DNA of 63,250 nt from Chiloscyllium plagiosum (Eukaryota), in assembly GCF_004010195.1 (NCBI RefSeq), contig NC_057742.1, positions 43,323,368 to 43,386,617 on the forward strand. The letters are read 5' to 3'. The position numbers and the translations under genes are program-made. The number at the start of each line of letters is the position of its first letter. Position 1 is the first letter of the stretch. This document shows, one piece after another, positions 20,749-60,730 of the stretch. Below the pieces are notes generated by a model. That model was not told where the DNA came from, searched no databases, and saw nothing but the letters and a program-made list of their open reading frames with translations.

Positions 20749-20872
20749 GTGAGTTTTTTTTTGTTCAATCTACCTTTGTTCCCCTCTCAATGTTAGTCTC
20801 CTCCAGGAATGTAAAAAACTCAGACATCATTTCATCAGCATTAATGTTTACTTTTTTGTTTTCTTTTTAAAG

Positions 20873-21185
20873 ATGCCCAGTCGGGGATTAACTTGAATCA
20901 ACCAGAGGGAAAGAGGCAGAGAGCGGCCTTTCTCAAAGGCACTCTGAAACTGACCTGTAAACCAGCGGGTTCGATCTTGGCAACTTCTACATGAGTTGGG
21001 TCAGACAGATTCCCAGACAGGACCTGGAGTGGTTGGTTAGCTACTATAGTTCATCCAGCAATAACTATGCCCCGGCGATTAAGGATCGATTTACTGTGTC
21101 CAAAGACACTTCAAACAATATTTTCACATTGGATATGAAGAGCCTGAAGATCGAAGACACCACCATCTTTTACTGTAGAAGATAT
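20873..21185 (+). pseudogene. IgM VH exon, frameshifted
   Basis: AQSGINLNQPE...TLKLTCK, then a 1-nt deletion at ~20961 gives TGA at 20992. The shifted frame continues [76 protein letters not shown]1 also has compensating indels. Confidence 0.95.
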
Positions 21186-22492: not shown

Positions 22493-22577
22493 CGTTATTG
22501 TGTGGCCCAGACAGAGAATGTAACACTATGACTATTTTCCTTACTGGGTCCAGGGACCATGGTGAAGGTGACTACAG
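22493..22577 (+). pseudogene. JH segment (coding 22531-22577) with 22-bp-spacer RSS
   Basis: CGTTATTGT-22nt-CACTATG, then ACTATTTTCCTTACTGG...ACCATGGTGAAGGTGACTACAG|GTAAG (YFPYW...GTMVKVTT). 1-nt deletion in the WGQG motif. The heptamer reads CATAGTG from the J side, so the critical CAC is lost. Confidence 0.9.
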
Positions 22578-31605: not shown

Positions 31606-31910
31606 GAGACACCATCTCCCCCCATACTTTACGGCTTAGTCTCCTCCTGTCAGCAGCACAATACCGAAGGTTCTATATCTTTGGTTTTTTGGCAATGGAC
31701 TATTCCCCTGACATCACCAAGGTGACCTGGAAGAAGAGTGGGGAACCAATCATGACTGGATTGAAGACTTACCCTTCAGTGAGAAACAAGAAGGGAACTT
31801 ACATCCTGAGCAGCCAGATAACTCTGACCGAGTCAGAGGCAGATTGCCCCAGCAAAATCTACTGTTAGGTTCAACATATGGGGTCACAGAACAGCACTGG
31901 AATGCCATAT
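31606..31910 (+). pseudogene. IgM Cmu1 exon
   Basis: Acceptor ttccag at 31600-31605. [22 protein letters not shown] in one frame, then [68 protein letters not shown]. The first domain Cys is replaced by Phe and there is a TAG at 31866-31868. The 3' boundary is approximate. Confidence 0.92.
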
Positions 31911-31994
31911 GTTAACAAGTGTTGTGGGAACTGAGATAAACAGAACATTTTTGATTAACCTGAATAAGGCATTATTTATAACACTTTCCACAGA

Positions 31995-34900
31995 ATCATA
32001 GAGGCATACAGCACAGGAAAAGGTCCTTTGGTCAATCCAGTCCACGCCTATCAATAACAACCACCTAACCATTCCAGTCCAACATGACGGCACCTGATCC
32101 ATTGTCTTGTGGGACTTGCCATTGCGAATATGCATTGAAAAACTTCTTATATATTATGAGGGGCTCAGCCACTACATGACTTACAGGCACTGAGCTCTAG
32201 GTTCACACCATCCTCTGTTTGATTTTGTTTTCCCCTGAGATCCACACTAAACCTCCTGGCCTTACCTTAACCCTATGCCGCTAAGGCATTGATCCTTCTA
32301 TCAAGGGGAAAGATTTCTGCCTATGCCTACCATAATTCCAGACATCTCAATTATCTTCACCCTCATTCCTCTTTGCTCCAAGGAAAACACCAGTCTATCT
32401 AATCTAATTTCATAATTAAAACTCTCCAGCTCAGGAAAATTCCTGGCAAATCTCATCAATGCTGCCTTCAGTGTAATCACTTTCCTTCGATCGCATGCAG
32501 TCCTAAACTGTACACAATACATCAGTGTGGCCTAACCAGCGTTTCATTCAGTTCCAGTATCATCTCCCTCCTCTTAAATTCAATGGCTCGACTAGTAAAA
32601 GCAAATAACCTCCACACCTTCTTGGCCTCTTTATCCAGCTGTCACAGTACATTAAGGGATGGATTGGAATATACACCAAATATCCTAAGTCCTTTCCAGG
32701 CTTCTGCCATTCAACACCCAATATCTTGCAGTATCTTCTGCCCCAGTGCATCAACTTACACTTATCCAGAATGATTTCCATTTGCCATTTCTCTGCTTAT
32801 ATGGCCAAACCTTCTATATCCTCCTGCAAAGTAAAGCTATTATGTTCATTACTTACCAAGACATGGCAATTTTCATTTCATTTGTGAACTCACTGATCAA
32901 CCCTCCTACTTTTTCATCTAAATCATTTGTTGCTAAGAGAAAACACAAAGAAATTAACATTGATCCCTGCAGAGCCCCACTTGACATGCATTTCCAGTCA
33001 CAAAAACATCCTCCGACAATTATTCTCTGCTCCCTGCCACTCAGCCAGTTCTGGATCCAATTCGTCAAATTAATTCAGATCCCATTGGCTCTGATCTTTG
33101 CTGTCGTCTGAACATCAACTTACCTCTTTGAAAACTACCAGCAAAGTGCTTAGACATGACTTCCCCTCAATACAACCATGCTGAAAATTGTTGATTAATT
33201 TTCCAAATAAAGTCTAATTCCGCACCTCTTTTGTTCCAATAGTTTCCCTACCACTGAGCCTAGACAGGCCTTTGTTTCATTGTTTATACCATCCTCTGTC
33301 CTACATAACAGTACTACACTGGCTGGTCTGCACTCATTTGGTCCCTGTGGCCAGACAGGAATTCTAAATTATTGCCAGCAACTCAACTATTTCATCCTCT
33401 GCATCGCTCAATAGCTTGGCATACATTTCATCTGCCTTGCAAATATAACTACTTTTCATCCAGCAGGATAACACAGAACATCACATCACCTCTCCTAATT
33501 TCTGAAAGTACATCACAACAATTCTCCATGAAGTCTATACCCACATTGTTCCTCTTACTAGTGAACATCGACACAACACATTTATTTTGACCATAACAGA
33601 ATCCTTTGGCTCCACGCCAATAATAACACTTAATGGGCATTACTGTTTCCCAAATATCCTTTTATTATGAATGAGCCTGTAACTTGTTTTAATATTCTCC
33701 TTTATGCTGACTGCTATTATTTTCTCATGGTCCCTTTTGCTCTTTCTCCCTAATTTCTCTTTCTTTCAAACTCCCCCTTGCACATTCTGTACTTCATCAG
33801 AGTTTCTATTGTTTTGAGACTTCAGTGTATACCGTAAGCCTCCCTTTGACGTCCAGAGATCGCTGCATCCTTGGTCCCATGTTGTGGCTTCATGGCCAAA
33901 ATGTCGTCCCTGTGCTTGTGTTGTTTCTGTCTTAAATGTGTCACACTGCTCTGACTCAGATTTACCAATAAGTCCGCTCTGGTCAAATCATTACATGGTC
34001 TTATTAAAATTGTCTTTCCCCCTTTCAGAACTTTGGTTCAGACTTTTTCCTATCCCTTTCCAGAACAATCTGGAATCCAACAGATTTATAATGTCTGAAA
34101 TGCGCTCCACCATTGATGTTTTAACCACTTGGTCGAGTTCATTACCTAAAGTTAAGTCCAGGTTCACCCCTTTCTTGCAAAGACTGTATTAAAACTGTCT
34201 GTTGTAAACATATTATTAAAATATTCTCCTGGGAGGTATTTTCAGAATTCTGATCCCTCTAATTTTTTGACACGATAAATATCCAAGCCTACGCTGAGGA
34301 AATTAAAATCCTCTTTTTCTCATTAGCACTTTCCTGAAATTTGCCCAGGTATTTGCATTTCTCGATCTTCTGACCCTACAGTGAAGTCTATAGTGCTCTC
34401 CCAGCAGTTATAGAACATAGAACATAGAAGAATACAGTGCAGTACAGGCCCTTCGGCCCTCGATGTTGCGCCGATCCAAGCCCACCTAACCTACACTAGC
34501 CCACTATCCTCCATATGCCCATCCAATGCCCGCTTAAATGCCCATAATGAGGGAGAGTCCACCACTGCTACTGGCAGGGCATTCCATGAACTCACGACAC
34601 GCTGAGTAAAGAACCTACCCCTAACATCTGCCCTATACCTACCNNNNNNNNNNNNNNNNNNNNNNNNNNNNNNNNNNNNNNNNNNNNNNNNNNNNNNNNN
34701 NNNNNNNNNNNNNNNNNNNNNNNNNNNNNNNNNNNNNNNNNNNNNNNNNNNNNNNNNNNNNNNNNNNNNNNNNNNNNNNNNNNNNNNNNNNNNNNNNNNN
34801 NNNNNNNNNNNNNNNNNNNNNNNNNNNNNNNNNNNNNNNNNNNNNNNNNNNNNNNNNNNNNNNNNNNNNNNNNNNNNNNNNNNNNNNNNNNNNNNNNNNN

Positions 34901-36150
34901 NNNNNNNNNNNNNNNNNNNNNNNNNNNNNNNNNNNNNNNNNNNNNNNNNNNNNNNNNNNNNNNNNNNNNNNNNNNNNNNNNNNNNNNNNNNNNNNNNNNN
35001 NNNNNNNNNNNNNNNNNNNNNNNNNNNNNNNNNNNNNNNNNNNNNNNNNNNNNNNNNNACCCCTCCTCCAGGTCATTTATAAAAATGACAAACAGCAATG
35101 GTCCCAAAACAGATCCTTGCGGAACACCGCTAGTGACGGCACTCCAAGATGAACCTTTGCCATCAACTACTACCCTCTGTCTTCTTCCGGCATTTCTCGA
35201 TCTTCTGACCCTACAGTGAAGTCTATAGTACTCTCCTAGCAGTTATAGAACATAGAACATAGAAGAATACAGCGCAGTACAGGCCCTTCGGCCCTCGATG
35301 TTGCGCTGATCCAAGCCCACCTAACCTACACTAGCCCACTATCCTCCATATGCCTATCCAATGCCCGCTTAAATGCCCATAATGAGGGAGAGTCCACCAC
35401 TGCTACTGGCAGAGCATTCCATGAACTCACGACTCGCTGAGTAAAGAACCTACCCCTAACATCTGTCTTATGTTTGCTTTATTTTGATTTTCAAGTACTG
35501 TCCATTTGCCTTCACTCGATGAGGTATCCATGAATTCATTTCTCTTTACAGCTGGAAATACTCTTGTCAGAATTGCGATAAAATCGACATTCTCTAACAC
35601 TGCCCCCCCCCCCCCCCCCCATTGCGCCCGTGCTTACACACACACATACTTTGCATCTTTCCCTGTCTCCCCTGAAGGCACTATAACCTGTAATATTGAA
35701 TAGCCACTCATGTCTCTCTCTCAACAACTCTCCGTGATATCAACTGCACCAATTCATGGTGGCTCAGTGGTTAGCACTGCTGCCTCACAGCACCAGGGTC
35801 CCAGGTTCAATTCCAGCTTGGGGCAACTGTCTGTGTGGAGTTTGCACATTCTCCCTGTGTCTGTGAGGGTTTCCTCTGGGTGGTCCAGTTTCCTCCCACA
35901 ATCCAAAGATGTGCAGGTCAGGTGAATTGGCCATACTAAATTGCCCATAGTGTTAGGTACATCAGTTAGAGGGATATGGTTCTGGGTGGGTTACTCTTCG
36001 GAGGGTCCGTGTGGACTTGTTGGGCTAAAGGGCCTGTTTCCAAACTGCAGGAAATCTAATCTAATTCCTCATTTATGCTGATAACTCATCTACCTTGTTC
36101 ATCAGACTCATTCATTAAAACGAATACCATCCAACATTGCTATCTTCCCT
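31995..36150 (-). mobile_element. Old CR1 LINE filling most of the Cmu1-Cmu3 intron, with younger CR1 (34410-35190) and SINE (35757-36063) insertions
   Basis: Minus-strand RT remnants ([27 protein letters not shown]) and endonuclease remnant (WLFNITGYSAFRGDR). Confidence 0.7.
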
Positions 36151-37394
36151 TTTGAAGGCATGAGAATGGGGTTGAGAAACATATTAGCCATAATCCATTG
36201 GCTGAACAGCCTTAATCTGTTCCTATATCTCACCATCTAGTGGTCTCAAAATGACATGGCAAAAATGTGAAGTGACCCTTGAAAATAAATCAAAATTAAG
36301 TTCAATACTTCATTCCCAGTTCAGGAATGACCTGTTGGCATTGGGCATTGTATAACATTGACCTTATCTGGTACTGAGCTCTTTAGCTTCATTCATCGGA
36401 CCAGACCACAGACCAAGTGGGTATCATATTTGATTAACTGGGATAAATGTGATCTAATTGAGCCTCGTTAAAACACTCCATGTAATTAGTGGATGTGGCA
36501 GGAAAATGTTTCAGCCTGGTTTCAGGATGAAGATTTTCCTACACTGAGTCGTGGGGTCTGAATAAAATTAGCACAAATTTCCACCAAGTTTGTACGTTAA
36601 TTTAAAATGCTTCTGCCTTTTTTTTTGCTCCACGAAGAAATTAAATATTGCAGATTGGTATTAAACTAAAAGTGCAGACCAGTCATGAACTAACTGAATG
36701 AAAGGAAAGACTTGATGTGATTGATGTCCTCCACTTTATCCAATTCTGTAGTCAGTGTCTTGTTTTCAGATCTATTCCAAATTTGGCACATGAGGAATAA
36801 TGCCATATTTTAGGGAACGATATCACAACAATCAATGCAAAGTATTGTTGATCACATTAAACATATTAAAGAGAATTTCCATGGCTGTTCTCTGTTCCCG
36901 TAACACTTTATATCCTCTGCAAGTGCATGAGGACAAAGAGAATAATTGTAATTTATTGTATTTTATCCAAAATTTAGAATGTGATTTGGCACTCAGTGTA
37001 ACCAACAGCATTTGCACGTAAGGTCCATGAACATGGAAATGAACTCATTATATACAGATTACTCTTGTAACAAGTATCAATAGATGGTCTTAAGTGAAGA
37101 AAGAACTCTGAAAGAAAGGTTACTCCATGGGTTACATCATGATACCTTTGTCGATTTTACTTTTTTCATAGGTTTCACTTGTTACAAAGCCAGTGTCTTT
37201 AGGAATAATTACACAGGGTATCTTACAGGTAATCACAATGTTTTCACAACCAAAATATAGAAACAATAGTAAAATAGTTTCAGCATTAGTTGGAAGTTGC
37301 CTTGTTGAAGGTGGTTTCTTCACCTTGTGAGAAAAGAGCCGGAAGACTGTGTGTTCTGATCCTTAAGACACATTTTTCATTGATTTTCTTTCAG

Positions 37395-37704
37395 AGGTGT
37401 CACCGAGTGGCAGATTACATAGTTACAATAATACCACCGCCCATAGAACAGGTCTTACTGGAGGCGACAGTAACGTTAACCTGCATTGTGTCCAATCTTC
37501 CTTTTGGAGTCAATGTCACCTGGATACAAGAAAATAAACCTCTGAAATTAGGGATTGCTGACCAGCCTGGAGAGAATCCTGACAACGTGATCAGCAAATT
37601 AGATATTTCTACTGAAGCCTGACTGAGTGGTGTTGATTTTGAATGTGTGGTGAACCATCAGAATCTACCGACACTTCTGAGAGACGCCATCCACAAGAAG
37701 AAAA
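37395..37704 (+). pseudogene. IgM Cmu3 exon
   Basis: [32 protein letters not shown]...[38 protein letters not shown]>TGA at 37620-37622. Length 310 nt (3n+1). Donor GTGAGC at 37705. Confidence 0.92.
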
Positions 37705-38155
37705 GTGAGCGGTGAGAGTAAAGCACACAGTGGATCCCATGTGTAATTTAGATCCAGTAACATCAATGGCAGGCTTTGATTGGTAATGAACAAACACCGT
37801 TGGTAGCATTAATGATTTGTGTGATAGCAGGATAGCTAAGTAGCTGATTAAGGAAAAGACAGACCAAAGGATATTCTATTCTGATTAGGTCAGATAAGGT
37901 GGGAAGAGGCCTGGTTTGTGACGTAAACATCAGCAATGACAAATGGACATAATTTCCTAGTTGTGGGCTGGAAACATGGAGGCGACTTTCAAATTAAGCT
38001 CTTGACTTTTTTTAATGAATAGAATGTGTACCATTCTGCTTCTTTAAAAAATGAAAGTGAATACATTCCAAATTAAAAATGACATATTTTAATATTTAGT
38101 GAAATTGATTCTGTATTTTTATCGTTGATTGATATTTTTCTCAAATATTCTGCAG

Positions 38156-38537
38156 TGATTAATCCGCTGGAGCTATCAGTGTCTGTCCTCCTGCCACCAA
38201 CAGAAGAAATCTCTGCTCAAAGGTTTCTCTTCCTCACCTGTTTAGTGAGAGGTTTCTCCCCCCGAGAGATCTTCATCAAATGGACAAACAATGACAAGCC
38301 GGTGAATCGCAGTAACTACAAGAACACCAAGGTGATGGCGGAGCGACAACAGCTCCTTCTTCATCTACAGCCTGTTATCCATTACAGCGGAGGAGTGGGC
38401 CAGTGGTGCTTCTTACTCCTGTGTGGTGGGACATGAAGCGATTCCATTGAAGATCATCAACAGAACAGTTGATAAACCCAGCGGTAAACCAAGTTTTGTG
38501 AACATTTCACTTGGACACTGTTAATCCATGTCAATAA
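38156..38537 (+). pseudogene. IgM Cmu4 exon with secretory tailpiece
   Basis: [42 protein letters not shown]..., 2-nt deletion at ~38343, then ...[41 protein letters not shown]. Internal membrane-splice donor G|GTAAAC at 38483/38484. Confidence 0.93.
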
Positions 38538-38573
38538 AAATCTCAAAGTTGAAACTAATAATTAAACAAAAGT

Positions 38574-38579
38574 AATAAA
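38574..38579 (+). terminator. Secretory-form polyadenylation signal AATAAA
   Basis: AATAAA ~37 nt after the tailpiece stop. Another overlaps the stop at 38533-38538. Confidence 0.55.
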
Positions 38580-38889
38580 GTTATTTTTTTCCTCCAATTG
38601 TGAATTAAGTATACGACTGTTTGATTAATTGTGTTTCCCACTTTTACTTATATTCCATCTGTACAGTCCAATTCCTCGGATGCTGCCTTACCTGCTATGC
38701 TTTTCCAGCACCATTCTAATCTAGACTCTGATCTCCAGCAACTGCAGTCCTCACTCTTGCCTTGATTATTGACGGGTCTAGGACTCGTGTCTTGTGCAAG
38801 TAATGTTCCCTTCTCATAACACCCTTGGTCAGAGACAGAGTAAAGCTCACTCATTACAGGATTCTGCAAAGTACCTTATCTGTCTTAAA

Positions 38890-39195
38890 TCTCTCTGGGA
38901 TAACAAGAGGTCATGCTTTCAAAGTGAGAGGTGGAAAGTTTAAGGGGGATACATGTGGCAAGTACTTCACACAGAGGATGGTGGGCGTTTGGAACGCGTT
39001 GCCAGCAGAGGTGGTAGAGGCAGGCACGGTAGATTCATTTAAGATGAGTCTGGACAGATGCATGAGTAGGTGGGGAGCAGAGGGATACAGATGCATAGGA
39101 ATTGACTGACAGGTTTAGACAGTACGTTTGGATTGGCCCAGGCTTGGAGGGCCGAAGGGCCTGTTTCTGGGCTGTAAATTTTCCTTGTTCTTTGT
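38890..39195 (+). mobile_element. CR1 LINE 3' end
   Basis: TRGHAFKVRGGKFKGD...FTQRMVGVWNALP. Confidence 0.8.
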
Positions 39196-40099
39196 TCTGA
39201 GATGAAATCTGACAATGTCCATTTTATGGCAAATGAAGACCACAAATTTTGAACTTGGTTTTCCTGATTCCCTGATTGCCTACTCTTACAAAAACAATGT
39301 CAACTCAAACTGCCACATCGCATCAATTGGGAATATATACTTAAGAGACTTTTACAATTTGTTTTGATTGGGACATACCAATCGCAAAGAATGCAGAAGA
39401 ACTTGAAGTTAACCTTTGTTTCTGGGGAACTGCCAGGAATTTTGCACCAGTGCATTAGTTGACAGAAAATATCTTCACTTTTACACCAAAGAGAATGCAC
39501 AGAAAAGTTGTTGTTGAGCAGATGGAGGAGGAGAGGAGAATAATTAACAGTCTGTACTTTAATCTCTGTGCAGAGTTTTCACAGTAGACATCCTCTGTAA
39601 TGTAACCTAGTTGCTAACAGGAACAGTCAGCTTCTTGCTTACTGTCCGAAGATTTAAAATTTCCATGCAAAATAATACCTTTGAAGCATGCTGAACACGC
39701 TAGGATGTGTTAAGCATTTGTTAACATCGACTCCCCTTAATCCAAAAAACTAATGTTGACACCATCCCAGCTTGTATTCCAGAGTTTTGTCTCAGTTTTC
39801 TGGAGCACATGGGATAAATTCTCGTATTCGAATACCTGACATCATTTTGATTCACGTACAGAACACGAGCAGACATCTTCTAATCAGCATATTAAGAAAT
39901 GGCATTATACATCTCTGGAGCAGTGGGATTTGAACTCAGACCTCTTGTCTCAGAGACAGCAATTCTATCACTGCAACAAAAGAGTCCTTCACAAAGCACT
40001 TACCTCTCCATGGCAATGAGAAATTTTCTCCACACCATCAGGGTGAGATCTAATTGTTGGCAATCCATTAAAATTATAACAACAATAAAAATTACAATT

Positions 40100-41068
40100 T
40101 GGTATGAGAGTAGAAATACACACTGATACAGAGAGATGCTCACAAATACAGACTAAAGACACATATACAGACTCTCATCTGAAGGCACATACTTATGCAT
40201 GCAAACAAATGTGCAAACACACAACCACGTTCAGAGCCACACATGAAAATTTTTATTTGGACATTCATCTAAGCACTTACAAAAATGCATATACACTGAA
40301 AGAAAGGCACATGCACAAATTAACAGGAATATCCACACATAACCATGAAAAAAACATAGACACATGTTAACACAGAAATGGACACGAGTACATATACATT
40401 CATACAGCGTAATGCTTACAGATATGCATGCATAAACACTCCGATATAACATCCGAAAAATGTCCCCCATGTGTAGACTCACAGAGATATATGTGAGCAC
40501 AGAGATAAACATTAATCTCATTATTTTCCCAATTTCATAATAACATATGATGGAAGAGGCCGCTTAATTATTTATTTTTAAAATGCATTGATCAGCACGT
40601 ATACATGGTCACACTACACACAAATTCGGTCTCAGGGCATGAAATAAACAAGGAAAATGGCACAAGTGTCAGCAACCATCCACACACAATAACAGAAAAA
40701 ACACATCAGGAGATGGTTTTGGATAAATTGCCATACAAGCAGACATCATCACATGAATACAAACATCCTTCAAAACATGGTGTTGCATGCTAAACTTTGT
40801 TGAGCATAAGCATGAAAATAACCTAATGTAGGTAGGATCTGAAATAGATACATGAAGACATATTTTAGATGGCACTAATGAAAAGTAAATATTCACAAAA
40901 CATTAAAGATAAGCATAGTCATCAACAAAGTAGCATATTAGCATGACAATGCTTACACATTATGAAATGCATAAAATTTAGGTGCACAAACACGTCAATG
41001 AGCACACCAGCATTAAAGGAACATGAGTATGATAATTCATGCTAAAACTCCAACATGGGCAAGTGTGA
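40100..41068. repeat. Degenerate AC-rich low-complexity tract
   Basis: Strong A/C strand bias with many cacaca/acata units. Confidence 0.55.
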
Positions 41069-41464
41069 AGTAAGAAGCACTCTTAACCACATCCACAAAC
41101 ACTAAAGGAAAAATATTCACCACAAGTGGTAGAAAAAAATAAATTAAGGGACATGTGCACAAAAACTTATTCCTAAAATCCACAGATCCTACAAACAAAA
41201 ACATGAAGCAATGTTCTTACTGTGGATGTAAGTTATGTTCATGATTTGCCAAGTAGTTGGTCACCAATAAGTGAAAATGAAAATCACATTTGAACTCTCA
41301 TCCAGTACACGCTACAATTTTCAACTAAACTGCTGTCACAGCCCATATTTAAAATATAATAACAGAATTAAAATAACTGTTCCAATAAAAAAGTCCTCAA
41401 ATGATAAACAATGATAATATTCTTCAATTTAAAAAAAAAGACAATATAATTCATAATGTTCTGA
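41069..41464 (+). repeat. Left arm of ~390-bp inverted repeat
   Basis: Reverse complement of 43524-43907 with scattered mismatches (e.g. agtaagaagcac... vs ...gtgcctcttact). Confidence 0.93.
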
Positions 41465-41884
41465 GGCACTGAGTTCTTATCAGGCCTTGAATACTTACCC
41501 TCCATTGAGTGTTCTAGGCTGACCAAGATATCAAATTTGGCCAAGGCAAATCTAAATTGATGGATTATTTGAAAAACCTACAATTGTTTGCATAAGGGAT
41601 TCATATTCCATATGTAGTGCCCAGATTAAATAAAATTATAACTATTGGAGAAGGCTTCAGAGAGTCTAGATCAGATAGGTTCCAGAATATGTGAACAGTT
41701 GCTGTGATTAGTTGCTGAATTCTGTCTTGCACCATATAGATCCCAATGGGTGAATATTTCCAGTCCTTCTGATCTCTGCCTTGCCTGATTGACATCGACC
41801 TATGATTTATAGTTTTTGAGGGCTGCTGTTCAGTAATATCCCTGTATCGTATATATCTCAGTCTCATTCCCTGGGATTATGACA

Positions 41885-42750
41885 CAAGGTTGGAGGTACT
41901 TTCGATAGTATCGAGGGCTATTGCAGCACAACATAGACAGGATGCAGAGCTGGGCTGAAAAATGGCAGGTGGAGTTCAACCTGGATAAATGAGAAGTGAT
42001 GCATTTTGGAAAGTCAAAGTCAAATACTGAATATAGGATTAAAAACAGGATTCTTGGCAGTGTGGAGGAACAGAGGGATCTTGGTATGCAAATACATAGT
42101 GAATAGTTTTGTTAAGAAAGCATATGGTGTTTTGGCTTTCATTAACATGGGGATCGAGTTTAAGAGCTGTGAGGTTTTGCTACAGCTCTACAAGTCCTTG
42201 GTGAGACCACACCTGGAATATTGTGCCCAGTTCTGGTCGCCCTACTATAGGAAAGATACAGAGGCTTTAGAGAGCGTGCAAAGAAGGTTTACCAGGATGC
42301 TGCCTGGACTGGAGGGCTTGCATTATAAAGAGACGTTGAATAAGCTCGGACGTTTCTCTCTGAAGAGAAGGAGGAAGAGAGGTGACCTGATCAAGGTGTA
42401 TAAGATAATGAGAGGAATGGATAGAGTCAATAGTCAGAGACTTTTCCCCAGGGCAGGATTGACTAGTACGAGGGGACATAGTTTTAAGATATTAGGAGAA
42501 AGGTATAGAGGGGACGTCAGAGGAAGTTCTTTTACTCAGAGAGTTGTGAATGCATAGAATGCATTGCCAGCGGTGGTGGTGGAAGCAGAGTCATTAGGGA
42601 CACTTAAGCGACTGCCGGACATGCACATGGATAGCAGTGAGTTGAGGGATGCCTAGGTTGTTATTTTATTTTACATTAGGATTAATCCTCGGCACAACAT
42701 TGTGGGCCAAAAGGCCTGTTCTGTGCTGTACTTTTCTATGTTCTATGATT
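41885..42750 (+). mobile_element. Young CR1 LINE 3' fragment inside the inverted segment
   Basis: LYKSLVRPHLEYCAQFWSPYYRKD...TRGHSFK. Closely similar to 59850-60730. Confidence 0.9.
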
Positions 42751-43061
42751 TGACAAGGTGTGGTGTGTCAAATAGATCCCAAGATTTGTGCTCCTTGACA
42801 CTTAAGTGTGATAAAAACTCCAGTTCAGCGAATCCATCCTTGGTTTGTGTCACGTGTTGTGTCTGCATATTTGTCTGAACACTGACATTTTTGGCTGATG
42901 AATGTTTAGTTGGGCATTTCAGCTGGCGATTTATGTACTACTAACCCAGGCTATCCCAACATTTGGAGTACTTTTAGTTTAAATAGAGTAGAGCAAGCTT
43001 TCAAACTCCATTGCCTGTCTTTTTTAGACTTCTAGTGGAACAAAGCTTGCGGTTTTTATCA

Positions 43062-43070
43062 TTACTTGAT
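43062..43070 (-). pseudogene. Candidate TM2 mini-exon (IK-stop)
   Basis: Minus strand cctcag|ATC AAG TAA, 119 nt downstream of the TM1 donor. The polypyrimidine tract is weak. Confidence 0.35.
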
Positions 43071-43189
43071 CTGAGGTCATGACCCTTTGTGCATAAGAGG
43101 AAATGCTCTCTTATCATTCTGCCTCTGGAGTGTTCCCATAAGACATACCAAGAGAAAGATGCATTTACATTAGTGGGCCACACTCTCAC

Positions 43190-43307
43190 CCAGAGTGGTG
43201 GCAGCACTGCAGATAATACTCAGGCAGAATAGAATGATTAATGTGGAAGCAGTTGTCCAGATGTTGCCATTTTCATTTTTATAGTCTTCAAGTGTGACCT
43301 ATTGAAT
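43190..43307 (-). pseudogene. IgM transmembrane exon TM1, inverted relative to the cluster
   Basis: Minus strand: ttcgtag|AT TCA ATA GGT CAC ACT T.. GAA GAC TAT AAA AAT GAA AAT GGC AAC ATC TGG ACA ACT GCT TCC ACA TTA ATC ATT CTA TTC TGC CTG AGT ATT ATC TGC AGT GCT GCC ACC ACT CTG G|gtgaga = (D)SIGHT/EDYKNENGNIWTTASTLIILFCLSIICSAATTL. This is the conserved Ig membrane motif, with small deletions. Confidence 0.9.
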
Positions 43308-43523
43308 CTACGAATATAAAACCGAGAGAACGTAGTTAGATTGTTTATTGATCCAGTCTAATCTATCGGCATCAAAATAATGTAAGCAGAGACCATTAGA
43401 TCTTCTTTTAGCAGTCAGGTGTTTCTCAAATGTGACTCTCTATCTGTCTCTATCCTTGCATTATTGAATCTGAGCAAGAACTTGCTAACACTAACTGCAC
43501 ATATTCTTTCTTTATTATCCATG

Positions 43524-43907
43524 TCAGAACATTATGAATTAAAAAAAAATGAAGAATATTATCATTGTTTATCATTTGAGGACTTTTTTATTGGAACGGT
43601 CATTTTAATTCTGTTATTATATTTTAAATATGGGCTGTGATAGCAGTTTAGTTGAAAATTGTAACATATACTGGATGAGAGTTCAAATGTAATTTTCATT
43701 TTCACTTATTGGTGACCAACTACTTGGCAAATCATGAACATATATTACATCCACACTAAGAACATTGCTTCATGTTTTTGTTTGTAGGATCTGTGGACTT
43801 TAGGAATAAGTTTTTGTGCACGTGTCCCTTAATGTATTTTTTTCTACCACTTGGGGTGAATATTTTTCCTTTAGTGTTTGTGGATGTGGTTAGGAGTGCC
43901 TCTTACT
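43524..43907 (-). repeat. Right arm of ~390-bp inverted repeat
   Basis: Reverse complement of 41069-41464. Confidence 0.93.
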
Positions 43908-44229
43908 GGATGTATTTTCAATTTGATACCAGGTGCACCGAAAACTTGGAGAAATAAACTGCAACAAACAAGAAATGGGTAAAAATCATTGTGCTACGAA
44001 TAATCTATCAGTAAGATTCGTGTAAAAATTAATTTCCTGTTTTGTCCTTGCAGTTCACAGAGCTGATTAATTAGTGCTGTGTCTTTGATAATTTTCAGCT
44101 ATCCGTCATTCTACATTTAGTTATTGTAGCTACCATATGGATTACTGCATCTCCCTATGTACCTAAACAAAAATTCTAAATAAAATAAAGTAGAACTGCA
44201 AATTAAATACTCTCTCTAATTATTAAACA

Positions 44230-45075
44230 TTTAACAAATCAATGACATCAAATTAGAAAGGGAATGTGCACAACAGTCGACTCTGAGGACTGCAAGAAGT
44301 TACAAAATGGCATTAATAAATTTACAGGATGGTCAAATAATTGACAAATGAAGTTAAACACAGATAAATGTAAGGTGATGCAGGATACTATTGAAAGGTG
44401 CACGTCTAAGTGCGGGAAACAAACAAAGGGATCTCATAAAATTACATCAGTCACTAAAAAAAACACAAAAGGTTACGAAGGCCATAAAAATGCAAACTAA
44501 GCCCTCAGCTTTATCTCTAAATGGACTGATTTAAAAGTAGGGATGTCTTGCAAAGTCCCTATAAAAATTTGATTAGACTATAATTAAGAGCATTACGTGC
44601 AGTTCCAGTTGCCATGTTACAGAATGGATACAGACGTACTACAGAGGGTGAAGAGAATATTTATCATGTTGATACACAAATTTATGGATGTTTATATCAA
44701 GAAAGAATTGTTGTTGTTCACTTCTGTCTTGAAACGAAAAGAAGCCTTATGGCTCTAAAATTAGAGCGGGTACAAAAAAAATTCCTCTGTGGGGTAGAGC
44801 ACAACTAGTGTTTGTCAATGAAAAAAAACAAGAAATACAAAAGAGAATTCAGAAGAAACCTCTTCACTGAGAGAATGACGAGAACAGGGAATATGTGACA
44901 TAAATAGTTTAGATGTATTTCAAAGAAACTCGGCGAGCACATGGAAGGGATGGGAATAGAGAATTGCAAAGGGCAATTTAGATGAGGGAAGATGCAAATC
45001 AGCTCCAGGGGAACATAAGCATTGGCTTGGACTGGTTGTACCAAATGGTCTGTTTCTGTTCTATGTGTCCTCTGT
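44230..45075 (+). mobile_element. Old CR1 LINE fragment
   Basis: Decayed RT 3' motifs. Confidence 0.6.
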
Positions 45076-46594
45076 AATCCTCTGTTGAAAATCACTATAG
45101 TATGAAACAAATAAAGTATTTTTAACATCTAGAGGATTATAAAGTTGTTCATAAAATTAAACTCAAGTGTAGAGCACTGAATGTAAATGATTTTAGCAAA
45201 TGGTCACTCTTCAATATGGTATGGGAAAGTATAGTTTGTTTGGTTAGATTTTATTTTTGTTGATACATTTTCCCTTTGATCTGCCACATACAGTAGTTGG
45301 CAGAGATTAAGCTGATTGCTGAAATGGTCCTCGAGTTCCCAGCTTCATTTACTGGAAGCATCTGGTGTTTCTGCAGTAGATCAAAAATATTTTGTCTCAC
45401 TGTTGACCATTATCTGGAAAACCAGCTGCAAACTATAACCACTACCTGTGCGTAAAGAAATCTACTCAGCAACAATGCTGGAGAAAATTTTATTTTTCAG
45501 TTGTGTAACTTGGAGAACAATCCCTCCTCTCATTCATGGAAATATTTGCAGAGTCTCAGACATGATCTAAGCATCAACAGTTCACTGGAGGATCATTACA
45601 GCACTGTATAATATTAAGAAAAATTGATAAATCATCATTGTCATGGAGTGACACAGCATGGAAACAGACCCTTTGGTCCAACAGTCTCTGCCAGCCAAAA
45701 ACCCAAACTAAACTAATCCCACCTGTGTGCTCTTGGCCCATATCCTTCCAAACATGTATATTCATGTACTTATCCAAATAACTTTTAGAAGTTGTAGCAG
45801 TACCCATATCCAACTCATTCCACACACAAACTATTCTCTGTCTAAAAAGTTGCCCCTAATATCTTTTCCAATTTTTTTCTCCTCTCACTTTCACCCCTCA
45901 AACTGTTACGCTCCAGTGAAAAAAGTTCCAGTCGATCTGGATTTACAAAAGGTGACTCTGTTCCCTCACATTCTCCTGTGTTGTTAAACTAAAGATCTTT
46001 CCGCCACCCCAGGTCCACACAGAGCATCCCTTGATACTATTTCAAAGAATTGAAAGGAAGTTATCCCAGCCATATTGTTCAATTTTATTTTGTTTCAAAC
46101 ATCACCATAAAAATAGATGTAGATATCATTGCTGATTTATGGGAGAATGCTGTGTCACCAGTATCTACTGAAATACCTACATTAATCTCCTGGATATGCT
46201 TTGCGGGTGGACCTCTAGCTCACAAATGCAATTAGACATCAGGGAACAGGGAACAGGGAACACCCGCCCGGCTCACCTTGTACATTGCTCTTTGTGAAAA
46301 CCATGTTGTCAATAATCTGTCAAAAGATGTTTTTTTTCTAACTTTCGTAATTCCTGTTACTGATGTTGTCTGAATGAAGGGATGTTTCTGTTGGCATTTC
46401 TGGGAAACATGTGTGCATTAATTTTCATGTCGGTTTACTTTGATATTAAGTCAAGGATAGTTACAATGACTCGAGAAACAAAGTATAGAAACTGGCCATT
46501 AAGCTCCTTAGGCTGCACCAACTGATGCCGTTATCACACTCTGGCTCTGTTTTCAAGTGGCACAGGTCCCATGGGTGAAGTGATCTCTCTCTGT

Positions 46595-49535
46595 CATAGA
46601 GTCATAGAGATGTACAGCATGGAAACAGACTTTTCGCTCCAACCCATCCATGCAAACCAGATATCCCAACCCAATCTATTCCCAACTGCCAGCACCCAGC
46701 TCATATGTCTCCAACCCTTCCTATTCATGAAACCATCCAAATGCCTTTTTAAATGTTGCAATTGTACCAACCTCCACGACTTCCTCTGGCAGCTCATTCC
46801 ATACATGTACCACCCTCTGCTCCTTAGGTCTCTTTTATATCTTTCCCCTCTCACCCTAAATCTATGCCCTCGAGTTCTGGACTCCCCCAGCCTAGGGAAA
46901 AGACTTTGTTTATTTATCCTATCAATGCCCCTCATGATTTTGTAACCATCTATAAGGTAACCCCTCAGCTGCCGACACTCCAGGGAAAACAGCCCCAGCC
47001 TGTTCAGCCTCTCCCTATAGCTCAAATCCTCCAACCCTGGCAACATCCTTGTAAATTTCTTCTGAACCCTTTCAAGTTTCACAACACCTTTTCGATAGGA
47101 AGGAGACCAGAATTGCATGCAATGTTTCAACAGTGGCCTAACCAATGTCCTGTACAGCTGCAACACGACCTCCCAACTCCTGTACTCAATACTCTGACCA
47201 ATAACTGAAAGTGCACCAAATGTCTTCTTCACTATCCTATCTACCCTCGACTCCACTTTCAAGGAGCTATGAACCTGCACTCCAAGGTCTCTTTTTTCAG
47301 CAACACTCCCTAGGACCTTACCATTAAGTGTGTAAGTCCTCCTCTGATTTGCTTTCCCAAAATGCAGCACCTCGCATTTATCTGAATTGAACTCCATCTG
47401 CCACTTCTCAGCCCATTGGCCTATCTGATCAAGATCCGGTTGTAATCTGAGGTAACCTTCTTCACTGTCCACTACACTTTCAATTTTGGTGTCTTCTGAA
47501 AAGTTACTAACTATACCTCTTATGCTTGCATCCAAATCATGTATATAAATGTCAAAAAGTAGACGACCCAGAACCGATCCTTGTGTCAATCCACTGGTCA
47601 CAGGCCTCCAGTCTGTAAAACAATCCTCCACCACCACCCTCTATCTTCCACCGTTGAGCCAGTTCTGTATCCAAATGGCTAGTTCTCCCTGTATTCCGTG
47701 AGATTTAACCTTGCTAATCAGTCTCCCATGGGGAACCTTGTTGAACGCCTTACTGAAGTCTATATAGATCACATCTACCATTCTGCCCTTATCAAATCCT
47801 CTTTGTTACTTCTTCAAACGCCTCAATCAAGTTTGTGAGACAGGATTTCCCACATACAAAGCTATGTTGACTATCCCTAATCAGTCCTTGCCTTTCCAAA
47901 TATATGTACATCCCGTCTCTCAGGATTCCCTCCAACAACTTGCCCACCACTGATGTCAGTCTCACTGGTTTATAGTTCCCTGGCTTGTCCTTACCACCCT
48001 TCTTAAACAATGGCACCATGTTAGCCAACCTCCAGTCTTCCGGCAGCTCACCTGTGACAATCGATGATACAAATATCGAAGCAAGAGGCCCAGCAATCAC
48101 TTTCCTAGCTTCCCACGGAATTCTAGAGTATCAGGTCCTGATCAGGTCCTGGGGATTTATCCACCTGCTTGCATTTCAAGACATCCATAACTTTTTCCTC
48201 TATAATATGGACATTTTTCAAGATGTCACCATCTATTTCCCTACATTCTATATCTTCCATGTCCTCTTCCACAGTAAACGCTGATGCAAAATACACGTTT
48301 AGTTTCTCCCTCATCTCCTGCGGCTCCACACAAAGGCTACCTTGCTGATCTTTGAAGGGCCCTATTCTCTCCCTAGTTATCCATTTGTACTTAATGTATT
48401 TGTAAAAATCCTTTGGATTGTCCTTAATTCTATTTTCCAAAGCTATCTCATACCTCATGTCCCCTTTTTGCCCTCCTGATTTCCCTGTTAAATATACTCT
48501 TACTGCCTTTATTCTCTTCTAAGGATTCACTCGATCTATCCTGTCTATACCTGACCAATGCTTCTTTCTTTTTCTTAACCAAGCCCTCAATTTCTTTAGT
48601 CATCCAGCATTCCCTATACCTACCTGCCTTCTCTTTCACCCTAACAGGAATATACTTTCTCTGGATTCTCCTTATCTCATTACTGAAGGCTTTCCATTTT
48701 CCAGCCGTCCCTTAACCTGCGAAAATCTGCTCCAATCAGCTTTTGAAAGTTCTTGCCCAATACTGCCAAAATTGGCCTTTCTCCAATTTAGAACTTCAAC
48801 TTTTAGATCTGGTCTATCTTTTTACATCACTATTTTAAATCTAATAGTCGGTGAGGTCGCTGACCCCAAAGCACTCCCCTGCTGACACCTCAGTCACCTG
48901 CCCTGCCTTATTTCTCAAAAGTAGGTCAAGTTTTGCACCTTTTCTAGTAGGTACATCCACGTACTGAATCAGAAAATTGCCTTGTACACACTTAACAAAT
49001 TCTTCTCCATCTAAACCCTTAACACTATAGCAGTCCCAGTCTATGTTTCGAAAGTTAAAATCCCCGACCATAACCACCCTATTATTGTTACAGATAGCTG
49101 AGATCTCCTTACACATTTGTTCCTCAATTTCCCTCTGACTATTAGGGGGCTATAGTACAATCCCAATAAGGTGATCATCCCTTTCTTATTTCTCAGTTCC
49201 ACCCAAATAACTTCCCTGGATGTAATTCCGGGAATACCCTCCCTCAATACAGCTTTAATGCTATCCCTTATCAAAAACGTCACTCCCCCTCCTCTCTTGT
49301 CTCCTTTTCTATCCTTCCTGTAGCATTTCTATCCTGGAACATTAAGCTGCCAATCCTGTCCATTCCTGAGCCATGTTTCTGTAATTGCTATGATATCCCA
49401 GTCCCATGTTCCTAATCATGCCCAGAGTTCATCTGCCTTCCCTATTAGGCCTCCTGCATTTAAATAAATGCAGTTTAATTTAACAGTCCTACCTTGTTCT
49501 CTGCTTTGTCCTTACCTGCCCTGACTGTTTGACTG
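46595..49535 (-). mobile_element. Near-complete CR1 ORF2 (APE endonuclease plus RT), frameshifted
   Basis: VMVGDFNF (EN), KPGNYKPVRLTSVVGKLLE, QGSVLG..LF, NFSEDTKI, LYRTLVRPLL across several ORFs. Confidence 0.93.
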
Positions 49536-59509: not shown

Positions 59510-60730
59510 CGAGGAGGTGACAGTTCTTTGAGGAGGTGACAAGACAGGTCGACGAAGGTTCGAGCAGTGGATATTGTGTATATGGACTTCAGCAAGGCAT
59601 TTGATAAGGTTTCCCCATGGTAGGCTCATTATAAAGTCAGGAAGGATGGAATTCTTGGAGATTTGGCGATCTCGATTCAGAATTGGTTGGCTGACAGAAG
59701 GCAGAGAAGTGGTTGTAGATGGAAAGTATTCTACCTAGTGGTCAGTTTGAGTGGGGTTCTTGGGCCTCTGCTCTTTGTAGTTTTTATAAATGGCTTGGAT
59801 AAGGAGATTGAAGGGTGGGTTAGTAAATTTGCAGATGACACAAAGGTTGGAGGTGCCATTGATAGTATTGCAGACTATTGCAGGCTGCAGCACGACATAG
59901 ACAGGATGCAGAGCTGAGAAATGGCAGATGGAGTTCAACCTGGATAAATACAAAGTGATGTATTTTGGAAGGTCGAACTCAAATGCTGAATATAGGATTA
60001 AAGATCTTGGCAGTGTGGAGGAACAGAGGGATCTTGGTGTTCAAGTACATTCCACAAAATTGCCACCCAAGTGGATAGGTTTGTTAAGAAGACTTATGAT
60101 GTTTTGGCTTTCATTAACAGGGGGATCGAATTTAAGAGCTGCAAGGTTTTGCAACAGCTCTACAAGTCCCTGGTGAGGCCACACTTGGAATATTGTGTTC
60201 AATTCTGGTTGCTCTACTATAGGAAAGATACAGAGGCTTTGGAGAGGGTGCAAAGAAGGTTTACCAGGATGCTGCCTGGACTGGAGGGCTTGCCTTATGA
60301 AGAAAGGTTAAATAAGCTCGGACTTTTCTCTCAGGAGAGATGGAGGAAGAGAGGTGACCTGATCGAGGTATACAAGATAATTAGAGGTATGGATAAAGTC
60401 AATAGCCAGAGACTTTTCCCCTGGGTAGGATTGACTGGCACAAGGGGTCATAGTTTTAAGATATTAGGAGAATGGTATAGAGGGGACGTCAGAGGAAGGT
60501 TCTTTACGCAGACAGTTGTAAATGCTTGGGATGCATTGCCAGTGGTGGTGGTGGAAGTAGAGTCATTAGGTACATGTAAGCAACTGCTGGACATGCACAT
60601 GGATAGCAGTGAATTGAGGGGTGCGTCAGTTAAGGTATTTTATTTTACATTAGGATTAATCCTTGGTACAACATTGCGGGCCAAAGGGCCTGTTCTGTGC
60701 TGTACTTCTCTATTTTCCATGTTCCATGTT
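59510..60730 (+). mobile_element. CR1 LINE RT 3' fragment
   Basis: GPLLFVVFINGLD..SKFADDTKV and LYKSLVRPHLEYCVQFW. Confidence 0.9.

What the first reader, a model, noticed from the sequence alone, without database searches (positions are those of the whole stretch)
41069..43907. IgM membrane exon is inverted inside a cassette bounded by ~390-bp inverted repeats
Seen: TM1 (NIWTTASTLIILFCLSII.SAATTL, 43190-43307) and a candidate TM2 are on the minus strand, opposite to V-D-J-Cmu. They lie in a 2,059-bp segment (41465-43523) between inverted arms 41069-41464 and 43524-43907. The left arm is continuous with the upstream AC-rich intron and the right arm reads directly into the TM1 acceptor. Established: membrane IgM needs splicing from the Cmu4 internal donor (38483) to a same-strand TM1. 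Inference: as assembled the locus could only have made secreted heavy chain. The one-sided inverted duplication is the signature of a staggered-break inversion, and recombination between the arms would flip TM1 back. A reversible membrane on/off switch is conceivable but speculative. The arms differ at scattered sites, which argues against a simple assembly artefact and for an old event.
Basis: partly seen in the sequence, partly recalled or inferred. Interest (0 to 1): 0.85.

Follow-up and report, generated by a model that had tools for sequence, protein, structure and literature searches.

The report
Old micro-inversion in dead shark IgM gene
The membrane exon of this shark antibody gene really is flipped between two 0.39-kb inverted repeats, but the flip is an old, fixed scar in a gene copy that is broken in every exon, not a working on/off switch.

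Summary
The arms 41069-41464 and 43524-43907 are inverted copies: a 362-nt ungapped core at 95%, or 384 aligned positions with 20 mismatches and one 12-nt indel. They enclose 2,059 bp that carry the TM1 exon on the minus strand at 43190-43307.

It is not an assembly artefact. Contigs from two studies of the same organism bridge the novel junctions 41464/41465 and 43907/43908. Contigs from two other organisms, about 4.0% and 5.5% diverged, bridge 41464/41465 and 43523/43524. One contig of organism C carries both, collinear with the window. The inversion is therefore germline and old, and it has the same orientation in 4 of 4 runs.

The functional reading fails, because the cluster is a pseudogene:
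- V and J are disrupted.
- Cmu1 has a frameshift, a lost Cys and a stop.
- Cmu2 was not found.
- Cmu3 has a stop.
- Cmu4 lacks 2 nt and has a truncated tail.
- TM1 is 5 nt short and out of frame, with 5 of 15 invariant residues changed.

The one-sided inverted duplication fits the staggered-break inversion model (PMC1885836). That mechanism is inferred, because no non-inverted paralogue could be fetched. TM2 was not identified. Interest is low.

The parts
20826..21176 (+). VH pseudo-exon of the cluster (context)
   Evidence: tblastn with P0012 residues 1-140 aligns 51% over 117 aa with three in-frame stops in the aligned frame. FR1 is split over two reading frames.
22533..22576 (+). JH remnant, split over two frames (context)
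   Evidence: Two weak overlapping tblastn matches in different frames (E 2.1 each), with the W-G-x-G motif altered. Weak evidence.
31606..31907 (+). Cmu1 pseudo-exon
   Evidence: Two tblastn HSPs in different frames overlap at 31677-31689, which marks a frameshift. The conserved Cys is Phe (TTT at 31686). There is a stop TAG at 31866.
37395..37703 (+). Cmu3 pseudo-exon
   Evidence: 75% identical to P0004. The invariant Trp is replaced by a stop, TGA at 37620.
38155..38527 (+). Cmu4 pseudo-exon with secretory tail; internal TM donor G|GT, last exon base 38483
   Evidence: HSPs 38155-38349 and 38339-38482 lie in different frames. Paralogue contigs carry an extra GA behind 38340 (table 4). The tail changes frame again near 38510 and ends early.
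41069..41464 (+). Left arm (396 nt), continuous with the upstream Cmu4-TM intron
   Evidence: Contigs run across 41068/41069 in 4 of 4 runs (X1 rec4, X2 rec25, X11 rec12, X18 rec21).
41464..41465 (.). Breakpoint junction J1 (end of left arm | inverted interior)
   Evidence: Bridged by X2 rec27 (41398-41567), X11 rec13 (41397-41927) and X18 rec23 (41400-41919). No listed X1 piece bridges it.
41465..43523 (-). Inverted interior, 2,059 bp: former TM1-downstream intron, TM1, and 216 nt of former pre-TM1 intron
   Evidence: The single 1,395-nt contig X18 rec23 lies on 41400-41919 and 43181-43576, both on the + strand.
41879..42747 (+). 5'-truncated LINE tail fragment inside the interior
   Evidence: 85% identical to 59835-60721, with further copies in the window. 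Read depth runs to 10^5 and above (table 2). By eye (no tool alignment was run), its ORF resembles the C-terminal part of the RT-bearing ORF 46594-47637 (RVT_1 hit for that ORF). The fragment's own ORF had no Pfam hit.
43190..43307 (-). TM1 pseudo-exon (118 nt)
   Evidence: From the native acceptor and a phase-1 donor it reads D-S-I-G-H-T-stop. The conserved core lies in another frame. It is 5 nt shorter than the 123 nt implied by P0004. 5 of 15 columns invariant in 9 membrane IgMs are changed (E>K, F>L, F>C, Y>C, V>T).
43524..43907 (-). Right arm (384 nt), inverted copy of the left arm, adjoining the former pre-TM1 intron
   Evidence: 43523/43524 is bridged in 4 of 4 runs (X1 rec7, X2 rec30, X11 rec15, X18 rec23).
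43907..43908 (.). Breakpoint junction J2 (outer end of right arm | downstream DNA)
   Evidence: Bridged by X2 rec31 (43863-44249, 0 differences) and X1 rec8 (43877-44249, exactly 31 letters on the arm side). No listed piece of X11 or X18 bridges it.

Best explanation
This is a real, germline, evolutionarily old micro-inversion in the Cmu4-to-TM region of a shark IgM heavy-chain cluster that is now a thoroughly decayed pseudogene.

The ancestral order was upstream intron, arm, 216-nt pre-TM1 intron, TM1, downstream intron, all on the + strand. The DNA broke at two places. One break was staggered over about 0.39 kb (the arm). The other was nearly flush, at the far end of what is now 41465. The overhang was filled in and the ends were rejoined the wrong way round. 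This left the arm in place (41069-41464), put the interior with TM1 on the opposite strand (41465-43523), and placed a second, inverted copy of the arm at the far side (43524-43907).

The two copies have since drifted apart by about 5%. The inversion does nothing today. It is one of many lesions in a dead gene copy.

Shown: the structure, its presence in independent data and in three organisms, and the pseudogene state. Inferred: the break-and-fill-in mechanism, the ancestral order, and the order in which the lesions arose.
For: Structure: (arms, uniqueness, 2,059-bp interior).

Reality and age:
- J1 is bridged in organism A (X2), B (X11) and C (X18).
- The inner right junction is bridged in 4 of 4 runs.
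- J2 is bridged in both organism-A runs, which come from two studies.
- One organism-C contig spans from the left arm's inner end to the right arm's inner end, collinear with the window.
- The listed orthologous pieces differ from the window by 141/3540 (4.0%, B) and 177/3219 (5.5%, C), against 20/384 (5.2%) between the arms. The duplication is therefore about as old as the split of these organisms.
- The arm differences have a natural spectrum, 11 transitions and 6 transversions.
- The strand skew flips between the arms.

Pseudogene state: (stops at 31866 and 37620, Cys>Phe at 31686, frameshifts in V, Cmu1, Cmu4 and TM1, no Cmu2 match). Pseudogene IgM clusters are known in nurse shark (PMC2435157, passages read).

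Mechanism: in Drosophila, 17 of 29 fixed inversions carry inverted duplications of non-repetitive breakpoint sequence. In 12 of 18 of these the duplication is on one side only, and the median size is 321 bp. The authors explain them by staggered breaks with fill-in and end joining (PMC1885836, abstract and passages read). The 384-396-nt one-sided duplication here fits that description.
Against: - No non-inverted paralogue or outgroup could be fetched (look-up of encoding contigs closed; metagenome scan blank). The ancestral order and the adjacency of 41465 with 43908 are therefore inferred, not seen.
- J2 is not bridged by any listed piece from organisms B and C, and J1 by no listed piece of X1.
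- All read evidence is short-read contigs, which drop rare variants. A minority orientation cannot be excluded.
- TM1 differs from functional TM1 far more (11 of 34 residues) than about 2.6% per-arm drift since the inversion would predict. Either the arms have been homogenised by gene conversion and the event is older than it looks, or TM1 was already decaying.
- TM2 was not located, so the extent of what was inverted relative to the gene's 3' end is unknown.
- The individual lesions outside 38250-44249 were not checked against reads.
Confidence: 0.8

Rival explanations
1. Two-step origin. An inverted copy of the arm arose first, by any small duplication. Homologous recombination between the two arms then flipped the interior, and could flip it again (the 'invertible segment' reading).
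For: Arms of about 390 nt at 95% identity are long enough for occasional homologous exchange. The arms are slightly less diverged (5.2%) than the window is from organism C (5.5%), although the inversion predates that split. This would fit some exchange or gene conversion between the arms.
Against: Each arm sits in its own native context on one side only: upstream intron on the left, pre-TM1 intron on the right. A single staggered event predicts exactly this, whereas a two-step route needs an extra coincidence. All listed bridging contigs show one orientation in 4 of 4 runs from 3 organisms. No strand-changing joint is among the 15 joints shown, but 240 more were not shown.
Confidence: 0.1
2. 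Replication-based template switch (fork stalling or break-induced replication). A nascent strand switched to the opposite template and back, producing the inverted segment and the inverted duplication in one event, without two double-strand breaks.
For: The end product is the same as seen. Nothing in the sequence distinguishes it from staggered breaks. This mechanism is known to me from general knowledge, not from a call.
Against: I looked at the junction sequences by eye and saw no obvious microhomology or inserted template snippets at J1 or J2. Without the ancestral sequence this cannot be judged.
Confidence: 0.07
3. The right arm plus TM1 is a fragment of another IgM cluster inserted upside-down. 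It replaced this cluster's own TM1 and is not a local inversion.
For: TM1 is much more diverged from functional TM1s than Cmu4 is from functional Cmu4s: 5 of 15 invariant columns changed against 2 of 49, Fisher p 0.006. Depth shows that many paralogous copies of this region exist in the genome.
Against: The arms are 95% identical, as close as orthologues of organisms B and C are to the window. The left-arm homology ends exactly where the inverted material begins, so an insertion would also need a deletion of the native TM1 starting precisely at the arm's end. No second TM1 exists in the window. TM1 is not significantly more decayed than Cmu1 plus Cmu3 (5/15 against 5/43, p 0.11).
Confidence: 0.03
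4. Assembly artefact, such as a chimeric join or a collapsed paralogue.
For: The window has three N gaps and lies in a multi-copy gene family, where misjoins are common.
Against: All four boundaries are bridged by short-read contigs of run X2, from a different study than X1. J1 is also bridged in organisms B and C. The arms differ at 20 sites with a natural substitution spectrum.
Confidence: 0.01
5. A functional secreted-only IgM gene, or a reversible membrane/secreted switch.
For: A TM1 on the wrong strand does preclude the membrane splice. Cmu4 is the best-preserved exon.
Against: There are stops or frameshifts in V, Cmu1, Cmu3, Cmu4 and TM1, and no Cmu2. Orientation is the same in 4 of 4 runs. 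No RNA holder of the stretch was on record.
Confidence: 0.01

Closest known systems
Inversions with inverted duplications at the breakpoints, explained by staggered breaks (Ranz et al. 2007, PMC1885836; abstract and passages read)
   Same: The inverted segment is flanked by inverted copies of sequence that was single-copy at one breakpoint. The duplication is on one side only, as in 12 of their 18 cases. Its size (384-396 nt) is close to their median of 321 bp. The copies have diverged by point changes and an indel.
   Different: Those are chromosome-scale inversions between fly species. This one is only about 2.4 kb, lies within a single gene in a shark, and inverts one exon. The ancestral state was not seen here.
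Pseudogene IgM heavy-chain clusters of sharks (nurse shark groups 6, 7, 8 and G2C; Malecek et al. 2008, PMC2435157; passages read)
   Same: It is a V-(D)-J-Cmu minilocus of the shark multi-cluster type that carries inactivating lesions and sits beside many functional paralogues.
   Different: The passages I read give no structural detail of those pseudogenes. In the listings I found no report of an inverted TM exon in a shark cluster. Only listings and abstract starts were seen, and subscription papers are not covered.
Membrane IgM heavy chains of sharks (P0004/GCC19654.1 Chiloscyllium punctatum; P0006, P0007, P0009 Scyliorhinus torazame; P0010 Heterodontus francisci)
   Same: Cmu1, Cmu3, Cmu4 and TM1 of the window align to them. 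P0004 is the closest for every Cmu piece; for TM1 it ties with three others at 11 of 34 differences.
   Different: In the window every exon is disabled, Cmu2 was not found, and TM1 lies on the opposite strand.

Membership tests
Shark IgM heavy-chain cluster (V-D-J-Cmu1-4-TM1-TM2) | Exons homologous to shark VH, JH, Cmu domains and TM1, in cluster order on one strand | tested here: not met
   V, Cmu1, Cmu3 and Cmu4 are in order on the + strand, and TM1 is homologous but on the - strand. Homology is met. The same-strand order is not.
Shark IgM heavy-chain cluster (V-D-J-Cmu1-4-TM1-TM2) | Open reading frames and conserved Cys/Trp of each Ig domain (a functional gene) | tested here: not met
   Stops at 31866 and 37620, Cys>Phe at 31686, and frameshifts in V, Cmu1, Cmu4 and TM1. 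It is a pseudogene member.
Shark IgM heavy-chain cluster (V-D-J-Cmu1-4-TM1-TM2) | Cmu2 exon between Cmu1 and Cmu3 | tested here: inconclusive
   tblastn with P0004 residues 101-220 found no Cmu2 match. A 415-nt N gap at 34644-35058 lies in that interval.
Shark IgM heavy-chain cluster (V-D-J-Cmu1-4-TM1-TM2) | TM2 micro-exon (V-K-V-K-stop in P0004) downstream of TM1 | tested here: inconclusive
   Motif and regex scans gave only chance-level or poorly placed hits. The exon is too short to recognise without paralogue DNA.
Staggered-break inversion with inverted duplication | Inverted copies of the same sequence flank the inverted segment | tested here: met
Staggered-break inversion with inverted duplication | The duplicated sequence is not a dispersed repeat or transposon end | tested here: met
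   The pair is unique in the window. I saw no target-site duplication at 41068/41069 against 43907/43908 by eye. Arm depth in reads is far below that of the LINE fragment (table 2). The left arm does show tens-fold depth in X2, probably from paralogous introns.
Staggered-break inversion with inverted duplication | The ancestral, non-inverted single-copy arrangement is seen in an outgroup or paralogue | not testable with these tools
Organisms B and C already carry the inversion.
Invertible DNA switch (flip-flop segment) | Both orientations present among individuals or cells | tested here: not met
   Only the window's orientation appears in the listed bridging contigs of 4 of 4 runs. Contigs can miss rare forms.
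Invertible DNA switch (flip-flop segment) | One orientation yields a working product | tested here: not met
   TM1 is out of frame and the gene is disabled throughout.
Assembly artefact | The novel junctions are absent from independent sequence data | tested here: not met
   The junctions are present in X2, X1, X11 and X18.

The most novel reading that the evidence does not exclude
The inversion may have been the first lesion. It would have stripped this cluster of its membrane form while the rest stayed under selection, or in concerted evolution, as a secreted-only IgM gene for a long time before the whole cluster died. This would explain why TM1 has lost 5 of 15 invariant residues while Cmu4 has lost 2 of 49. 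It would also be a natural case of an antibody gene that cannot serve as a B-cell receptor. The test needs the orthologous clusters of organisms B and C, and dated paralogues, to order the lesions.
Probability: 0.12. Interest if true: 0.4.

Novelty: new member of a known kind. Interest (0 to 1): 0.15.

Why it matters
It matters little for immunology, because the locus is a dead copy among many IgM clusters and the flipped exon regulates nothing.

It has modest value in three ways:
- It is a clean, small, sequence-resolved example of an inversion with a one-sided inverted duplication in a vertebrate, shared by three organisms. It could be used to date the event and to measure gene conversion between inverted arms.
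- It warns annotators that an isolated minus-strand TM1 in a shark IgM cluster can be real rather than a misassembly.
- It bears on how pseudogene clusters decay. Cmu4 is noticeably better preserved than TM1, which hints at either ordered loss or continued homogenisation of C exons by neighbouring functional clusters.

Tried and rejected
- Transposon with long terminal inverted repeats: rejected. I saw no target-site duplication at the outer ends by eye. The left arm is continuous with the intron in all four runs. The pair is unique in the window. The segment carries a host exon.
- TM2 inside the arms: the best motif hits (41270-41283 + and 43693-43706 -, 2 mismatches of 14) are the two copies of one arm sequence. 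They have a poor acceptor context and no nearby stop, and on the minus strand the hit would lie upstream of TM1. I judged this a chance match.
- TM2 elsewhere: searches gave nothing convincing.
- IgM1gj-type three-domain gene (P0014): by eye, the window's Cmu1 is not specially similar to it, and P0004 is closer in every exon. I did not pursue this.
- 'TM1 decayed first': significant against Cmu4 (p 0.006) and against all C exons (5/15 against 7/92, p 0.012), but not against Cmu1 plus Cmu3 (p 0.11). It is kept only as the novel case. One Cys column counted twice was removed.
- The TM1 search of 1.84 billion representatives gave 5 hits at E up to 0.001. I judged two real from their sequences (P0004, P0005) and two to be repeat proteins (P0002, P0003). 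The sequence of P0001 (3,294 aa, no matched stretch reported) was not looked at.
- The search with the P0004 tail gave 15 proteins, of which 11 were fetched. P0015 to P0017 were not fetched or used.
- Reference sets: 10 proteins for the C exons (P0009 was left out because its model lacks most of Cmu4) and 9 for TM1.
- Literature: (listings and abstract starts only) showed no report of an inverted TM exon in a shark IgM cluster. Supplements were not opened, and none seemed to bear on the claims.
- Earlier notes of this scan gave no sequence to compare.
Full report
**What is there.**
- The window has three N runs, none inside the finding.
- The repeat finder on 39000-46000 returns a single inverted pair: 41069-41430 against 43546-43907, 362 nt, 95% complementary.
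- A gapped alignment carries the homology on to 41464 and 43524. That gives 384 aligned positions, 20 mismatches and one 12-nt indel in an A/T run.
- The pair has no third copy in the window.
- The 17 differences in the core are 11 transitions and 6 transversions, 3 of them at CpG. That is the look of evolutionary drift rather than sequencing error.
- The A-over-T skew of the intron upstream continues through the left arm and is mirrored in the right arm.

**The interior.**
- It holds a 5'-truncated LINE tail on the + strand (41879-42747). It is 85% identical to 59835-60721, has further copies in the window, and reaches read depths of 10^5 and above.
- The TM1 exon lies on the minus strand at 43190-43307. 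It is the only TM1-like sequence in the window.
- I could not confirm a TM2 on either strand.

**Is it real?** The look-up of sequencing runs listed 20 holders in 7 studies and three coded organisms. I laid 38250-44249 on Logan contigs of four runs at 90% likeness: X1 (organism A, study P1), X2 (A, study P2), X11 (organism B) and X18 (organism C). Among the pieces listed in table 8:

| Boundary | Bridged by | Not bridged by a listed piece |
|---|---|---|
| 41068/41069 (native, outer left) | 4 of 4 runs | none |
| J1, 41464/41465 (novel) | X2 rec27 (67 + 103 letters), X11 rec13, X18 rec23 | X1 |
| 43523/43524 (inner right) | 4 of 4 runs | none |
| J2, 43907/43908 (novel) | X2 rec31 (45 letters in the arm, no differences), X1 rec8 (exactly 31 letters) | X11, X18 (X18 has no depth in the 43850-44049 bin) |

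- One 1,395-letter contig of organism C lies on 41400-41919 and again on 43181-43576, both on the + strand. A single molecule-like record therefore carries J1, the minus-strand TM1 and the start of the right arm in the window's arrangement.
- That contig has 474 letters where the window has 1,261, so the interior differs in length in C.
- The structure is not an assembly artefact, and it is present in three organisms.
- The listed B and C pieces differ from the window at 141 of 3,540 letters (4.0%) and 177 of 3,219 letters (5.5%). The arms differ at 20 of 384 (5.2%). The duplication is about as old as, or older than, the split of these organisms.
- All of this is contig evidence. Contigs drop rare variants, and only the longest of about 164,000 pieces, and 15 of 255 joints, were shown.

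**Is the gene alive?** No. A search with the TM1 peptide alone against 1.84 billion representatives found a membrane IgM of Chiloscyllium punctatum (P0004 = GCC19654.1) and a fragment (P0005). tblastn of P0004 and P0012 against the window, with codon checks, shows the following:
- **V (20826-21176):** in-frame stops, and FR1 split over two frames.
- **J:** split over two frames. The matches are weak.
- **Cmu1:** two HSPs in different frames, the domain Cys replaced by Phe (31686), and a TAG stop at 31866.
- **Cmu2:** no match. A 415-nt N gap lies in that interval, so this point is open.
- **Cmu3:** the invariant Trp replaced by TGA at 37620.
- **Cmu4:** split over two frames at about 38340, where paralogue contigs carry two more letters (table 4). 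The secretory tail changes frame again and ends early.
- **TM1:** also broken. It is 118 nt, whereas P0004 implies 123 nt. From the native acceptor it reads six residues and then a stop, and the conserved core is in another frame.

Against 9 shark membrane IgMs, 5 of 15 invariant TM1 columns are changed (E>K, F>L, F>C, Y>C, V>T). The figures are 2 of 49 in Cmu4, 3 of 22 in Cmu3 and 2 of 21 in Cmu1. Pseudogene IgM clusters are known in nurse shark (PMC2435157, passages read).

**How it arose.**
- The left arm keeps its native neighbour on its outer side, the upstream intron, which is continuous in all four runs.
- The right arm keeps its native neighbour on its inner side, the 216 nt that lead into the TM1 acceptor.
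- One event gives this pattern: a break staggered over the arm, a second nearly flush break beyond TM1, fill-in, and rejoining in the wrong orientation.
- This is the model proposed for fly inversions, where 17 of 29 carry inverted duplications of non-repetitive breakpoint sequence. Twelve of 18 of those are one-sided, and the median size is 321 bp (PMC1885836, abstract and passages read).
- A replication template switch would leave the same product.
- A two-step route, with an inverted duplicate first and homologous flipping later, needs an extra coincidence, and no second orientation supports it.
- An inserted fragment from another cluster needs a deletion starting exactly at the arm's end. 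It also sits badly with 95% arm identity.
The mechanism therefore remains an inference.

**An unexplained point.**
- TM1 differs from every functional TM1 at 11 or more of 34 residues. That is much more than about 2.6% drift per arm would give.
- Either the arms have been kept alike by gene conversion and the event is older than it looks, or TM1 lost constraint earlier than the C exons, or Cmu4 has been refreshed by conversion from functional neighbours.
- The excess is significant against Cmu4 (p 0.006) but not against Cmu1 plus Cmu3 (p 0.11).
- I keep 'the inversion came first and left a secreted-only gene for a while' as the boldest reading that is not excluded, at about 0.12.

**Verdict.**
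It is a real and old inversion of the staggered-break kind. It is not a secreted-only gene today and not a switch.
- This is an ordinary structural scar in one dead member of a large gene family, so interest is low.
- By protein similarity the window is closest to Chiloscyllium IgM. The organisms in the read tools are coded, and I did not try to decode them.

Noticed in passing
window 46594-49283, minus strand: A largely open LINE lies about 2.7 kb downstream of the right arm. It has an RVT_1 hit (E 6.8e-8) in the 347-aa ORF 46594-47637, and a weak endonuclease match (24.7 bits, below Pfam's 27.4 cut-off) in 48841-49116.
   Followed up: partly
window 41878/42756 (tables 5 and 5c): Contigs of X1, X11 and X18 join 41878 to 42756, with four other letters in between, at depths of 260-1,140. 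This skips the LINE fragment. The sides are only 20-21 letters. They may be LINE-less paralogous copies of this intron or another repeat. Bin 41650-41849 is tens-fold deeper than single copy.
   Followed up: no
window 41919-43181 compared with organism C contig X18 rec23: The organism C contig has 474 letters where the window has 1,261, so the interior is about 790 nt shorter or partly different in C. The timing of the LINE insertion relative to the inversion is open.
   Followed up: no
window 38250-38449 (table 2): Run X1, whose kind is not on record, has a Cmu4 depth of about 490,000 against about 1,900 in X2, while the LINE depths differ only about four-fold. X1 may contain RNA or IgM-enriched material.
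   Followed up: no
window 31908-37394, N run 34644-35058: No Cmu2 homologue lies between Cmu1 and Cmu3 in the assembled letters. The interval holds LINE-like ORFs and an assembly gap.
   Followed up: partly
window 38505-38530: The secretory tail is shortened and changes frame. It reads ...NISLGHC-stop in one frame, and the usual ...DTVNPCQ-stop ending is displaced into another frame.
   Followed up: partly
protein P0012 (Chiloscyllium punctatum GCC-type model, 276 aa): This database model joins V-J-Cmu1 directly to a TM tail, with no Cmu2-4. It is either a mis-predicted gene model or a truncated cluster in that genome.
   Followed up: no
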